From: Scyliorhinus canicula
Taxonomy: Eukaryota
Direction of reading: 5' to 3'
Assembly (NCBI RefSeq): GCF_902713615.1
Contig: NW_024055490.1
Span: 591,262-655,261 of the forward strand
Length of the DNA: 64,000 nucleotides
Shown: positions 31,187 to 34,688 of the stretch, in pieces
Numbering within the stretch: position 1 is the stretch's first letter
Layout of the letters: each line of letters begins with the position of its first letter
Made by a program: the position numbers and the translations under genes
The notes under the pieces: generated by a model
Told to the model about the DNA's origin: nothing
Database searches by the model: none
What the model saw: only the letters and a program-made list of their open reading frames with translations

Positions 31187-31720
31187 TGATTTTGTACCAG
31201 ACTCCCTCTAGTTGCTGTCTCTCAGTCCGCAGTACTACACCGCGCTGTCAAACAGCAGCAGTTCCCGGATGTTGAAATTACCCTCACTCCTCGAACTGTC
31301 CAAAGATGCAGAAAATCGACTCCCCACACCCACTGCTCTGGAAAATATCTCCGTAATTAGGAATGTAGATCAAGAATATGAGGGCTTCGTCCCGGTCCTG
31401 ACGGTACAATTGCAAATAATATGTACCAGCGGTGGTCGAATAGCTGAAATCAAGTTATCGATTCTCCTTCAAACTTTGTCGCTGTAACCGGTTCATGTGA
31501 AACCGAATCTGCACCGATAACACCTGCAAAAAATAGAAATCCGAGCTTAAACTTTGTATTACTTTGTTAGAAATCATGCAATCACGGAATTGTATATATT
31601 ACAGTTAAGGGTGGATCACAATGTAAGTATCGCGAGCTGTCTGGAAATTGTGCCCCTTGGGAACTTACCAGTTAAGTGAGTTGCAGCTGTGATGAAAATG
31701 TAAAAGGTGATACACAACAT
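31187..31720 (-). pseudogene. TRAV: TCR alpha/delta-type V pseudogene (V-psi)
   Basis: Leader exon 31720-31669 (MLCITFYIFITAATHLT, gtaagt donor). V exon from 31523 (VIGADSVSHEP...DSAV*YCGLR) has two frameshifts, first Cys->Phe, conserved Trp->Leu and TAG at 31235-31237. Heptamer lost; nonamer ACAAAATCA at 31187-31195. Confidence 0.85.
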
Positions 31721-32809
31721 GTTCAGAGATGGTAGTGGATTTGAACTCAGTGAGTTGCAGCTGAATTGTTGCAGTCCAGAGTTCAGAAGATGTGAGTAAT
31801 ATCCGGCCTCACTACCGATTGGTTCATTCCCGACAGAGCCAGCAGGAGACACCCAATCAGCTCAAAGCTCCTGTGTCCTACATTTCATCCAATTAGATCC
31901 GTTTCTTTGTTACGTCAGAGCGAGGAGCCCGGAACCACTTGCACCTGTTTTCAGAACAATGAACTGAACACAAGAACATCAGATGATGAGGAGCAGGATC
32001 TGCAGTGGACGATTTGCCCCTTCACATGGGGGTGCTCTGCAATTGTACAGATCATAGTTGTTCGACCTGAAATCTACTTTCCTGCACCACCTTCATGTCC
32101 CTTATTTATGGGCAGCACGGTAGCATGGTGGTTAGCATAAATGCTTCACGGCTCCAGGGTCCCAGGTTCGATTCCCGGCTGGGTCACTGTCTGTGTGGAG
32201 TCTGCACGTCCTCCCCGTGTGTGCGTGGGTTTCCTCCGGGTGCTCCGGTTTCCTCCCACAGTCCAAAGATGTGCGGGTTAGGTGGATTGGCTATGCTAAA
32301 TTGCCCGTAGTGTCCTAAAACGTAAGGTTAATGGGGGGATTGTTGGGTTACGGGTATAGGGTGGATACGTGGGTTTGAGTAGGGTGATCATTGTTCGGCA
32401 CAACATTGAGGGCCGAAGGGTCTGTTCTGTGCTGTGCTGTAATGTTCTATTTCCCCGCATATCCCCAAATCCAATATATGTCTCGAAACAACTAAACGAC
32501 GAACAAATGTCGCTCTCTGACACAGAGAGGGCGTGAAAGCGAATGTTAGTCCTGATACTGAGCGTATCTTTGAGACAGGGCACAGATGGATGCTATTTAG
32601 TGTTGTCATGACGATGGCATTTGGAGAGCTGCTCGCAAAACACAGAAACTACTATAAAAATGGATTTAGCAGACAATGATACACGTTCAGCACTACAGAA
32701 AGAAATAATTAGGGCTAGCTGCTCTTTATGATATTGCTTTGTTTACATAAATAGTTCACAATCCAGGTGAAAGATCTAATTCAGTGAATCGAGGTGAGAG
32801 TGCTTTACC

Positions 32810-32848
32810 GGTTTTTGTACGGGTTGAGAGTCCCTCTGTAACAGTGTG
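32810..32848 (-). other. 23-bp recombination signal sequence of V1
   Basis: CACACTG (32848-32842), 23-nt spacer, consensus nonamer ACAAAAACC (32818-32810). Confidence 0.93.
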
Positions 32849-33286
32849 GGGCTCAGCACACAGAGATACACGGCAGAGTCAGAGACACGGACCCCGGTGA
32901 TATTTAAAGGAATCGTTTTCTTATCCTTGTCTAAATCAGCAGAAAACCGGTCAGGGAAATCTGAAGACCTTTCTCCCTTCCCCGCGCTATATTTCTTTAG
33001 TAGATATCTCGGAGCTTCCCCTGGATACTGGATGTACCAGAAGAGATTCTGGTCAGTATATTTTGCTTTGTAACTGCAGTTCAATATTGCTGTCTGTCCT
33101 TCCTGAACCGGTAATTCAGGCGGCTCCTGGGAAACCGAATCTTGGCCACTGGTTCCTGTAACAACATATAGAATGTGTCATAAATTTGTGAGTAAATATA
33201 ACCCATGAAACACAGGAGGAGGATTTGAGCTCAGACTCACCGGGCAGCAAGACCATTATTATCAGTAAAGCACACAGGGAGCACAT
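32849..33286 (-). CDS. TRAV: TCR alpha/delta-type V gene segment V1, structurally intact
   Basis: Leader exon 33286-33241 (MCSLCALLIIMVLLP), 85-nt GT-AG phase-1 intron, V exon 33155-32849 (TSGQDSVSQEPP...LNCSY...LFWYIQYPGEAPRYLL...DSAVYLCVLSP) with both Cys and the Trp present. Confidence 0.92.
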
Positions 33287-33451
33287 GGTTCCTGATTGAG
33301 CAGTAAAAAGTGACACTGTTTTAAATATGTTCATGCTTCTAGTCTCATATCAAAGTGCAAACCCAGATCAGTGGCAAAGAGTAAACGTAGATCAATTCAT
33401 GGGAAATTGAGGGACGTTTGTCAGTACTACGATTGCCTGGTTTATCAGCTC

Positions 33452-33459
33452 TGACGTCA
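33452..33459. promoter_or_regulatory. CRE palindrome upstream of V1
   Basis: TGACGTCA about 165 nt 5' of the V1 ATG. TTACGTCA sits at a similar distance from V-psi (31910-31917). Confidence 0.5.
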
Positions 33460-34177
33460 GCTGAGGGCCAATCACTGTTAGTTGAGCGTTTATTAATGCG
33501 GGTTCTCTCCAATCACATTCCACCCCTGGCTGTGTCTTTCTCGCTCCCTTCCTCACATTGTCGTCATTCTGTCTCTTTCTCGGTTAAAATCGCTTTCCTT
33601 CGACCTCAACTTTCACATCTTTCCTCAGGTAGATATTCCTCCCCACAAAATATGAAAGATAAAATAAATATTTTAAAATCAGCCTCACACACAGATGTTA
33701 ACGAGGCCATTCAGTGCACGAACATAATTAATAATTACTGTTTTAAAGGTACCCGGGATAAATAGTCATCCAATTCTAGACCAAGATGCGCTTCCATTGG
33801 GGTCTCTTGTACCGGTAAAGTACTTATTTCAGTCAGTCATCATGTGCACCCCAGGAATTTTAAACAGTGATAACTCTGATATTTGATCACTTTTAAAAAG
33901 TGCTGCATGGTAGATTACCACCTGATCAAGAAGTTTCACAAATACAGATTGATGAAATGATTCTCCGAGATCGGCAGGTTTATATAAATGGGATCGGGAA
34001 ATTATGGAATTTGATTCTGGGGTAATATGACCGCCAAATGTCAAATGGCCCAACAGTGAGAACCATTGACCTCATTGAGGGAAAACCATTCAGATGGAGC
34101 TGGATTGTCCCGTTTATTATCTGTACATTTGCTGTGCAATGCAACTCCTTGTGCTTTCTTGTTAGGGAAATGGCGCC

Positions 34178-34216
34178 AGTTTGTGTATGAGCCCCGCCGG
34201 GCCCTCATTCACTGTG
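34178..34216 (-). other. 23-bp recombination signal sequence of V2
   Basis: Consensus CACAGTG (34216-34210), 23-nt spacer, ACACAAACT (34186-34178). Confidence 0.92.
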
Positions 34217-34688
34217 GGTCTCAGCGCGCAGTAATACACGGCGCTGTCTGTCATCTTCAAATCTGTCATGGACAAGTGAAAAGTACTTTGTGTCGGGTTG
34301 AGTTTCCCGCTGAAGTGTTCAAACCCGGGAGCCGTCTGGTTAAACCCATAACTATCGGCTCTGAGCAGATACTGAGGAGCACGGTGTGGATACTGGCGAT
34401 ACCAGAACAGGCCATAGCTTGCAGCTGAACTCGATACCGAATAACTGCAGGGTATGGCTGAATCTTCACCCTCTTCTGCGTCGACTCGTTGTTCTTCCTG
34501 AGACACCGAGTCTCCCTTACTCATCCCTGAAAAGAAAAAGCTGGTTAGAAGGAGAATCATGAGGAGGATGAGCACCCGAAGATGGAAATCAGAACCCATT
34601 TGGGAATTGGAGGATTCAGTACAGAAGTTCAATATAACCAACCTATCATCAGGACAATAACCAGAGACAGGCAGAGTATCAGCCCCAT
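34217..34688 (-). CDS. TRAV: TCR alpha/delta-type V gene segment V2, structurally intact
   Basis: Leader exon 34688-34643 (MGLILCLSLVIVLMI), 116-nt GT-AG phase-1 intron, V exon 34526-34217 (MSKGDSVSQ...PCSY...LFWYRQYP...DSAVYYCALRP). Confidence 0.92.

What the first reader, a model, noticed from the sequence alone, without database searches (positions are those of the whole stretch)
31187..34688. Three tandem TCR alpha/delta V segments stranded in a ZNF/tRNA cluster with no D, J or C in view
Two Vs have every functional hallmark: leader, GT-AG intron, Cys/Trp/Cys and a 23-RSS with near-consensus heptamer and nonamer. A third is decayed. The three are mutually divergent, about 1.5 kb apart, on the same strand. 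I found no 12-RSS J (FGxG) or C exon in the ~31 kb downstream, nor further Vs in the ~29 kb upstream. They could be recombination-competent orphons, a dispersed satellite of the alpha/delta locus used by long-range or trans rearrangement, or substrates of a shark-type multicluster arrangement. Intact RSSs in divergent Vs hint at selection.
Basis: partly seen in the sequence, partly recalled or inferred. Interest (0 to 1): 0.85.

Follow-up and report, generated by a model that had tools for sequence, protein, structure and literature searches.

The report
Shark TCR V genes, not orphans
The three T-cell-receptor V gene segments are real (two look usable, one is dead), but they are one copy of a V-gene cassette repeated dozens of times in a very large, poorly assembled shark TCR alpha/delta V array, so they are ordinary rather than stranded orphans.

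Summary
Three V-set gene segments lie on the minus strand at 31.2-34.7 kb. V-A and V-B each have a 46-nt leader, a GT-AG phase-1 intron, Cys/Trp/Cys and a 23-RSS. V-C is a pseudogene. The window holds no other V, no J and no C.

The "stranded" reading is not supported. The window is C98:591,262-655,261 of an 847-kb scaffold.
- The same V-A/V-B pair recurs on that scaffold 63 kb and 102 kb away, on the same strand.
- The whole triplet has at least 3 copies at 100%, at least 14 at 93-96% and at least 11 at 77-80% nucleotide identity, spread over dozens of scaffolds.
- More than 1,000 first-look V candidates exist genome-wide.

The D-J-C core of the TRD/TRA locus lies near the start of another scaffold, C108. 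In order it holds Vs, TRDD, Js, a probable TRDC exon, then about 70 or more TRAJ. Only about 120 kb lies upstream of its first Vs, so the V array is broken up in the assembly.

Both intact Vs show the fish TRAV 3' signature (T8G9, RSS at position 15). Nearly all family copies keep open frames.

Best reading: ordinary germline TRAV/TRDV members of a translocon array that grew by block duplication together with ZNF and tRNA genes. Use in rearrangement could not be tested. Other windows of this scan noted similar V/tRNA arrays in this genome.

The parts
34643..34688 (-). V-A leader exon (L-part1, 46 nt, starts ATG, ends before GT donor)
   Evidence: Sequence reading and splice-site check.
34217..34526 (-). 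V-A V exon (intact; Cys23, Trp41, Cys104; ends TGC GCG CTG AGA CC)
   Evidence: Translation. Pfam V-set E 6e-16. The best single-domain PDB matches are TCR alpha chains.
34178..34216 (-). V-A 23-RSS: heptamer CACAGTG, 23-nt spacer, nonamer ACACAAACT. It starts at position 15 counted from the Cys codon.
   Evidence: RSS scan and position check. Heptamer and nonamer are unchanged in the paralogue 63 kb away.
33452..33459 (.). Perfect CRE palindrome TGACGTCA, 166 bp upstream of the V-B start codon (putative V promoter element)
   Evidence: Motif scan found only 3 perfect CREs in the 64 kb. The functional role is inferred from known TCR V promoters.
33241..33286 (-). V-B leader exon (46 nt)
32849..33155 (-). 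V-B V exon (intact; ends TGT GTG CTG AGC CC)
   Evidence: Translation. Pfam V-set E 2e-17. PDB matches.
32810..32848 (-). V-B 23-RSS: heptamer CACACTG, 23-nt spacer, nonamer ACAAAAACC. It starts at position 15 counted from the Cys codon.
32108..32447 (.). 340-bp SINE insertion between V-C and V-B. It is found only in this copy and its two 100% twins (C626, C555).
   Evidence: The own-genome DNA search splits every 93-96% copy at this interval. It is absent from the C98 paralogue.
31669..31720 (-). V-C pseudogene leader exon
31217..31523 (-). V-C pseudogene V exon (two frameshifts, stops, first Cys lost)
   Evidence: Three-frame translation. The same TAG stop is present in the paralogue at C98:685-686 kb.
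31130..31216 (-). V-C decayed RSS region. The heptamer at the coding end is deleted. An RSS-like CACTGTG-23-ACATAAACC lies 45 nt further on (heptamer starts at 31172).
   Evidence: and the alignment with the paralogue.
28778..29599 (+). Two canonical tRNA genes (Arg-ACG 28778-28850, Val-CAC 29527-29599) in the same repeat unit
   Evidence: ARAGORN and Rfam at gathering score.
20330..21535 (-). C2H2 zinc-finger ORF (401 aa, 12 fingers). It is one of five ZNF ORFs in the window; the others are 2690-3544(+), 13046-13864(-), 49471-50241(+) and 61317-62024(+).
   Evidence: Pfam zf-C2H2 / zf-H2C2_2.

Best explanation
V-A and V-B are ordinary germline TRAV/TRDV-type V gene segments, and V-C is a pseudogene, of a shark TCR alpha/delta locus organised as a translocon.

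They form a three-V "homology unit" inside a tandem segmental-duplication unit of roughly 60 kb. That unit also carries C2H2-ZNF ORFs, tRNA genes and LINEs. The unit has been copied many times, in at least three age layers (100%, 93-96% and 77-80% identity). The result is a multi-megabase V array that the assembly leaves scattered over dozens of unplaced scaffolds.

The D-J-C core (proximal Vs, TRDD, Js, probable TRDC, TRAJ array) sits near the start of another scaffold, C108.

Inferred mechanism: in thymocytes, RAG joins the 23-RSS of V-A or V-B to the 12-RSS of a TRAJ (alpha chain) or a TRDD (delta chain) over a long distance. Joining is by deletion or inversion depending on orientation. Transcription starts from the V's own promoter; V-B has a CRE.

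Shown here: the gene anatomy, the copy structure, the location of the J/D/C core and the preservation of open reading frames.

Inferred: that C98 belongs to the same chromosome region as C108, and that these Vs are actually used.
For: Anatomy:
- V-set domain, 46-nt leaders and GT-AG phase-1 introns, and 23-RSSs.
- T8G9 and an RSS starting at position 15 from the Cys codon in both intact Vs. PMC10322711 reports this pattern for expressed fish TRAV.
- Among single-domain PDB chains in the top 60, only TCR alpha chains appear, with no beta, gamma or delta.

Array context:
- V-family hits on C98 lie at 498.8, 521.8, 523.7, 624.1, 625.5, 687.0 and 688.4 kb, all on the minus strand.
- The triplet block has at least 3 copies at 100%, at least 14 at 93-96% and at least 11 at 77-80%.
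- The paralogue 63 kb away is 92-98% identical in coding and non-coding sequence alike.
- The window start resembles the window end and the next 10 kb at 82-98%, at offsets of 58.5-63.3 kb.

Single J region:
- At least 91 matches to an FGxGTxLxVxP J pattern lie on C108:140-295 kb, all on the + strand. None lies on C98, and only one doubtful match (on C106) lies on any V-bearing scaffold. The reversed control pattern gave 0 forward and 5 reverse matches.
- C108 also has Vs with 23-RSS at 119.7-128.9 kb, a D with a 12-RSS and a 23-RSS at 136.4 kb, and a J encoding ADKLIFGNGTRVIVEP at 136.8 kb.
- A C1-set exon carrying CLASDFYP, the TRDC signature of PMC10322711, lies at about 182.9 kb.

Selection:
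- 44 of 49 V-A-family and 57 of 61 V-B-family copies (64-100% aa identity) are full length and stop-free.
- Under random substitution only about 26% stay stop-free at 79% aa identity.

Precedent:
- Bovine TRAV/TRDV expansion by replication of multi-gene homology units that mix functional genes and pseudogenes (PMC4289303).
- Shark TCR alpha/delta is a translocon (PMC12227049).
Against: - C98 and C108 are separate scaffolds, so linkage is not shown.
- The four Vs just upstream of TRDD on C108 are only 27-32% identical to V-A and V-B. The family was therefore not seen directly next to the core.
- TRAC was not found in the 27 kb after the last J. A gap lies at C108:298,448-298,947.
- No RNA or rearrangement evidence was obtained.
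- Some scaffold copies may be haplotigs or assembly redundancy, which would inflate copy numbers.
- Copies share ancestry, so the open-frame argument over-counts independent events.
Confidence: 0.8

Rival explanations
1. True orphons or a satellite array. The V/ZNF/tRNA cassettes lie on a chromosome, or at a very distant site, other than the one carrying the TRD/TRA J-C core. They are either unused or used only by rare trans or very long-range rearrangement.
For: C98 and all close-copy scaffolds are unplaced. The only V-family hits on a chromosome-scale contig are distant relatives on C17. DAD1, the usual neighbour of TRAC, is on C10 with no J array within 100 kb. The Vs next to TRDD on C108 belong to other families.
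Against: The J-C core is itself on an unplaced scaffold with only about 120 kb upstream of its first Vs. The bulk of the V array must therefore lie on other scaffolds. Hundreds of Vs with intact frames and RSSs are hard to maintain without regular use. The cassettes form arrays and are not isolated genes.
Confidence: 0.1
2. Shark-type minicluster or multicluster. Each cassette has its own J and C and rearranges locally, as shark Ig loci do.
For: Shark Ig loci are organised as miniclusters. Earlier scan notes report IgH-type V-D-J cassettes embedded in TCR V arrays of this genome (unchecked leads).
Against: There is no 12-RSS J and no C-type exon in the 64-kb window or the next 10 kb. That stretch covers a full repeat unit. 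The genome-wide J pattern hits cluster on C108 only.
Confidence: 0.03
3. Young, neutrally drifting duplicates. The Vs look intact only because the duplications are recent. They are not used and are on their way to becoming pseudogenes, as V-C already has.
For: The nearest paralogue shows equal divergence in exons and intergenic DNA, and mostly non-synonymous changes. Three copies are 100% identical. No expression evidence was obtained.
Against: Older layers at 64-85% aa identity are still almost all stop-free and full length, against about 15-26% expected under neutrality. Heptamers and nonamers are conserved while spacers vary. Excess replacement changes in the CDRs are typical of functional V families.
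Confidence: 0.07

Closest known systems
TRAV/TRDV gene segments of the vertebrate TRA/TRD translocon locus (fish-type TRAV as characterised in PMC10322711)
   Same: Split leader, V-set exon and a 23-RSS. T8G9 is present and the RSS starts at position 15 from the Cys codon. The coding ends are of the CAL/CVL type. The genome has a single large TRAJ array and a TRDD-J-TRDC core.
   Different: Contiguity with the J-C core is not shown in this assembly. The V region appears far larger and more repetitive than in teleosts or mammals. It is interleaved with tRNA and ZNF genes.
Bovine and ovine TRA/TRD loci, expanded by replication of multi-gene homology units (PMC4289303)
   Same: A block holding Vs of different subgroups, both functional genes and pseudogenes, is copied as a unit many times. 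The pseudogene is carried along as a passenger.
   Different: The unit here is about 60 kb and co-amplifies non-immune genes (C2H2 ZNF, tRNA). Copies sit on dozens of unplaced scaffolds. First-look candidate numbers exceed 1,000, against 371 genes in cattle.
Human V orphons (IGHV on chromosomes 15 and 16, IGKV and TRBV orphons); from general knowledge
   Same: V segments seen without nearby J or C.
   Different: Orphons are few, lie outside the locus on other chromosomes or at distant sites, and are not used. Here the Vs are part of long same-strand arrays of many V families, with frames and RSSs preserved.
Shark Ig miniclusters and TCR-delta-associated Ig-like Vs (TAILV, NAR-TCR), with TCR-type Vs lying between IgH clusters (PMC12227049)
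   Same: Same organism group and the same antigen-receptor gene complex. TCR alpha/delta-type V exons scattered among other gene clusters have been reported.
   Different: V-A and V-B are TRAV-like, not VH-like, and have no local D, J or C. VH-like Vs do occur in this genome, but next to TRDD on C108.

Membership tests
TRAV/TRDV germline V gene segment | Ig V-set domain with conserved Cys23, Trp41 and Cys104 | tested here: met
   Pfam V-set E 6e-16 and 2e-17; translations.
TRAV/TRDV germline V gene segment | Split leader with a short phase-1 GT-AG intron | tested here: met
   46-nt leaders, and GT donors and AG acceptors, in V-A, V-B and V-C.
TRAV/TRDV germline V gene segment | 23-bp-spacer RSS directly 3' of the V coding end | tested here: met
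   V-A 7/7 heptamer and 7/9 nonamer. V-B 6/7 and 9/9. Both have a 23-nt spacer. V-C: not met, decayed.
TRAV/TRDV germline V gene segment | Fish TRAV 3'-end pattern: T8G9, and RSS starting at position 15 from the Cys codon (PMC10322711) | tested here: met
   TGCGCGCTGAGACC followed by CACAGTG, and TGTGTGCTGAGCCC followed by CACACTG; criterion.
TRAV/TRDV germline V gene segment | Closest similarity to TCR alpha/delta V domains rather than beta, gamma or Ig V domains | tested here: inconclusive
   All single-V-domain PDB chains in the top 60 are TCR alpha chains (about 58-61 bits). Multi-domain antibody constructs score similarly per domain. No shark reference set was available; one search found nothing.
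TRAV/TRDV germline V gene segment | Lies upstream of TRDD-TRDJ-TRDC-TRAJ-TRAC on the same chromosome | tested here: inconclusive
   The core is on C108 and the Vs are on C98. Both are non-chromosomal scaffolds and linkage is not resolved.
TRAV/TRDV germline V gene segment | Found rearranged to TRAJ or TRDD-TRDJ in transcripts or thymocyte DNA | not testable with these tools
   The single read-laying run was lost to a filter. No run on record as RNA holds the stretch.
Orphon V (isolated V outside its locus) | Isolated from other V segments of the locus | tested here: not met
   Further Vs on the same scaffold at -126, -104, -102, +63 and +63 kb, on the same strand. The cassette is repeated in arrays on many scaffolds.
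Orphon V (isolated V outside its locus) | Located on a different chromosome from the J-C genes | not testable with these tools
   Both scaffolds are unplaced.
Shark-type minicluster (V-(D)-J-C within a few kb) | Own J (12-RSS) and C exon close to the V | tested here: not met
   No J or C in the window or the next 10 kb. No J-pattern hit on C98.
TAILV / NAR-TCR-type delta V | IgH-like V sequence (GLEW-type framework 2), or a leaderless supporting V | tested here: not met
   V-A and V-B have TRAV-type framework 2 (FWYRQYP / FWYIQYP) and leaders. VH-like Vs are instead seen on C108:126-129 kb.

The most novel reading that the evidence does not exclude
The roughly 60-kb V/ZNF/tRNA cassettes are a physically separate reservoir of TCR V genes, on another chromosome region than the D-J-C core. 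It would be kept functional by selection and used through very long-range or inter-chromosomal RAG joining. Alternatively, the co-amplified tRNA genes act as boundary or accessibility elements, or as the recombination engine that drives V-array expansion.
Probability: 0.1. Interest if true: 0.65.

Novelty: new member of a known kind. Interest (0 to 1): 0.25.

Why it matters
As posed, the finding would have meant recombination-competent V genes without a locus. The evidence shows instead a normal piece of a translocon V array. Its apparent isolation comes from the 64-kb window and from assembly fragmentation.

Some comparative interest remains:
- The shark TRA/TRD V region appears to have grown by repeated copying of a block of about 60 kb. 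The block carries a fixed V triplet together with zinc-finger and tRNA genes.
- This gave at least 150 confirmed V exons and more than 1,000 first-look candidates.
- The J region has roughly 100 or more segments.

The growth process parallels homology-unit expansion in cattle. The finding also flags these unplaced scaffolds as parts of one antigen-receptor region for anyone annotating this genome.

Tried and rejected
- The search for homologous proteins with V-B returned nothing. The collection seems to hold no vertebrate V genes, so no named shark relatives were obtained.
- Pfam DUF1968 (TRAC domain) gave only a chance-level hit in the genome.
- Using DAD1 as a synteny anchor gave C10:106.64 Mb, but no J array lies in the 100 kb beside it. 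The anchor did not help.
- TRAC was sought with the CLxTD signature in C108:296-324 kb and not found. A gap follows the last J.
- A perfect-consensus 12-RSS pattern mostly picked up an Ig-type cluster array on C4. The FGxGT J pattern was what located the TRAJ array.
- RNA evidence: the 18 runs that hold the stretch hold 79-98% of its words, intergenic DNA included, and none is on record as RNA. Expression and rearrangement therefore remain untested.
- The DNA search with the 14-kb flank scored only 10 of 73,215 candidates. It shows that flank pieces recur on V-bearing scaffolds, but it does not give a full map.
- Considered and rejected on framework motifs, PDB ranking and the lack of local J-C: IgL, TRB or TRG identity, and TAILV or NAR-TCR types.
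Full report
**What is in the sequence.**

On the minus strand of 31.2-34.7 kb there are three V-type gene segments.
- V-A has a 46-nt leader (34643-34688), a GT...AG intron, and a 310-nt V exon (34217-34526). The exon encodes a V-set domain with the conserved Cys, the Trp in FWYRQYP, and YYC. It ends TGC GCG CTG AGA CC. CACAGTG, a 23-nt spacer and ACACAAACT follow.
- V-B has the same build: leader 33241-33286 and V exon 32849-33155. 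It ends TGT GTG CTG AGC CC, followed by CACACTG, a 23-nt spacer and the perfect nonamer ACAAAAACC. A perfect CRE (TGACGTCA) lies 166 bp upstream of its ATG.
- V-C (leader 31669-31720, V exon 31217-31523) needs two frame changes to be read, has stops including TAG inside Y-Y-C, and has lost its first Cys. Its heptamer is destroyed.

V-A and V-B are about 40% identical. A scan of the whole window found RSSs of that quality next to V-type coding sequence only at these Vs. It found no further V, no J with a 12-RSS and no C exon, either in the window or in the next 10 kb. The neighbourhood consists of five C2H2 zinc-finger ORFs, a LINE reverse transcriptase and tRNA genes.

**What kind of V.**

Among solved structures, the single-V-domain chains in the top 60 for both Vs are all TCR alpha chains. 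No beta, gamma or delta chain appears. Antibody constructs score similarly only as multi-domain chains.

Giorgetti et al. (PMC10322711) describe two features of fish TRAV:
- a conserved T8G9 counted from the Cys codon;
- in zebrafish, an RSS that starts at position 15 in almost all expressed Vs.

V-A and V-B both have T8G9 and an RSS starting at position 15. Framework 2 is TRAV-like, not VH-like. I conclude that they are TRAV/TRDV-type segments. Whether they serve alpha, delta or both cannot be told from sequence.

**Are they stranded? No.**

The window is C98:591,262-655,261 on an 847,166-bp scaffold of a 4.22-Gb, 646-contig genome.

On C98 itself:
- the V-A/V-B pair recurs at 688.4/687.0 kb (93% and 88% aa identity);
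- it recurs again at 523.7/521.8 kb (76% and 66%);
- another V lies at 498.8 kb;
- all are on the minus strand.

The pair keeps its order and its spacing of about 1.36 kb on at least 30 other scaffolds.

A DNA search with the 4.5-kb triplet found:
- 3 copies at 100% (C98, C626, C555);
- at least 14 at 93-96%, each containing V-C, V-B and V-A contiguously;
- at least 11 at 77-80%.

Only 40 of 5,296 candidates were scored, so these are lower bounds. The 340-bp SINE at 32108-32447 is found only in the three identical copies.

The window's start matches its end, and the next 10 kb, at offsets of 58.5-63.3 kb with 82-98% identity. The window therefore spans about one unit of a tandem segmental duplication.

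**Where the rest of the locus is.**

A J pattern (FGxGTxLxVxP plus the exon end) gave 96 forward matches in the genome, against 0 for the reversed control. At least 91 of them lie on C108 between 140 and 295 kb, all on the + strand. None lies on C98. The only match on any other V-bearing scaffold is a doubtful one on C106.

C108 is 5.22 Mb long. Fetched pieces show, in order:
- four Vs with 23-RSS at 119.7-128.9 kb, two VH-like and two TRAV-like, 27-32% identical to V-A and V-B;
- a D flanked by a 12-RSS and a 23-RSS at 136.4 kb;
- a J encoding ADKLIFGNGTRVIVEP at 136.8 kb, and further Js up to 173.7 kb;
- a C1-set exon at about 182.9 kb carrying CLASDFYP, which fits the TRDC signature CLxxxFxP of PMC10322711;
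- the main J array from 200 to 297.4 kb.

This is the canonical V-Dδ-Jδ-Cδ-Jα order. TRAC was not found in the 27 kb after the last J, where a gap follows.

The core thus begins only about 120 kb from the end of its own scaffold, so most of the V array must lie on other scaffolds. DAD1 lies on C10 without a nearby J array and did not help as an anchor.

**Are the Vs maintained?**

The paralogue 63 kb away is 92-98% identical in exons and intergenic DNA alike.
- V-A differs at 16 nucleotides, giving about 8 replacements.
- V-B differs at 14 nucleotides, giving about 12 replacements, many in CDR1 and CDR2.
- Both heptamers and both nonamers are unchanged, while the spacers vary.
- V-C's stop is shared, so it was already dead when the unit was copied.

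Across the family, 44 of 49 V-A-type and 57 of 61 V-B-type copies at 64-100% aa identity are full length and stop-free. Random substitution leaves only about 50% stop-free at 89% identity and about 26% at 79%.

Copies share ancestry, so this is not a formal test. It still argues that the family is kept functional, with a passenger pseudogene. The same is described for bovine TRA/TRD homology units (PMC4289303).

**Interpretation.**

The best reading (about 0.8) is ordinary germline TRAV/TRDV segments in a translocon whose V region expanded by block duplication and is fragmented in the assembly. Shark TCR alpha/delta is reported as a translocon linked to IgH clusters, with TCR-type Vs scattered among them (PMC12227049).

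Rival readings and their weights:
- True orphon or satellite status: about 0.1. It cannot be excluded because C98 and C108 are not joined.
- A minicluster arrangement: about 0.03. It is contradicted by the absence of local J and C.
- Neutral young duplicates: about 0.07. This is disfavoured by frame preservation in the older layers.

**What could not be done.**

Expression and rearrangement were not tested. The runs that hold the stretch hold it whole, including intergenic DNA, and none is on record as RNA. No named shark V proteins could be retrieved.

Earlier notes of this scan describe tRNA arrays interleaved with TCR V segments, and multi-V cassette duplications, on other pieces of this genome. 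I used them as leads only. The copy structure reported here rests on my own searches.

**Verdict.**

The "stranded orphon" interpretation is not supported. The segments are new members of a known kind, and interest is low to moderate.

Noticed in passing
G000:C108:136,779-173,717 (loci L021-L023): About 20 J segments with FGxG motifs lie between the TRDD and the probable TRDC exon at about 182.9 kb. That is far more than the 2-4 TRDJ usual in other vertebrates. Whether they all serve delta is unknown.
   Followed up: partly
G000:C108:200,140-297,370: The main TRAJ array has about 70 or more Js. It contains internal tandem re-duplications, with identical J triplets recurring every 1.85 kb at 229-239 kb and 279-286 kb. 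An assembly gap lies at 298,448-298,947, directly after the last J. No TRAC was found in the next 25 kb.
   Followed up: partly
G000:C108:126,272-128,888 (L020): Two VH-like V segments (framework 2 ends GLEWLA or GPEWLA; coding ends YYCAHW and YYCAQR) with 23-RSSs lie just upstream of TRDD. They fit the TCR-delta-associated Ig-like V type described in sharks.
   Followed up: no
G000:C4:125.56-127.48 Mb: Thirty-three nearly identical perfect 12-RSSs (GGTTTTTGT, a 12-nt spacer, CACTGTG, with the same spacer sequence) are spaced about 10-100 kb apart on both strands. This looks like a large array of Ig-type clusters.
   Followed up: no
window 39642 (+), 26905 (-), 12282 (-); also C108:116,336 (-): A recurrent RSS-like motif, GGGGCTTTT followed by CACAGTA, a 22-23-nt spacer and ACAATAAGC, is carried by a repeated element. 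At 39642 it directly follows an ARAGORN "tRNA-Phe(aaa)" call, so it is probably SINE-borne. It could act as a cryptic RSS spread through the V array.
   Followed up: no
window 32108-32447: A 340-bp tRNA-derived SINE is inserted between V-C and V-B only in this copy and its two 100% twins on C626 and C555. It marks them as the youngest layer, or as haplotigs or assembly duplicates.
   Followed up: partly
window 5392-10728 and C98:659,939-665,261 (L013): A LINE with an open 510-aa reverse-transcriptase ORF (8741-10273) recurs one repeat unit later at 98.3% identity. This is higher than the V block's 93-96%, which suggests gene conversion or a more recent insertion.
   Followed up: no
G000:C9:77,106,576-77,106,881 and C10:106,640,819-106,643,386: DAD1 is present as a multi-exon gene on C10 and as an intronless full-length copy on C9 (a retrocopy). 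Neither is next to the TRA J region in this assembly.
   Followed up: partly
window 32700-34750: Eighteen public runs from six studies hold 79-98% of the sampled words of this stretch, although each holds only 41-299 million letters. They hold the intergenic DNA as well as the V exons. The cause was not resolved; candidates are multicopy DNA, chromatin libraries or read-through RNA.
   Followed up: no
window 24407-24494 (-), 30554-30645 (-), 15548-15634 (+), 39523-39613 (+): ARAGORN calls four further long "tRNAs" of 87-92 nt (Tyr-GTA, Lys-CTT, and Phe-AAA twice). Rfam does not confirm them at gathering score. They may be intron-containing tRNA genes or SINE heads.
   Followed up: no
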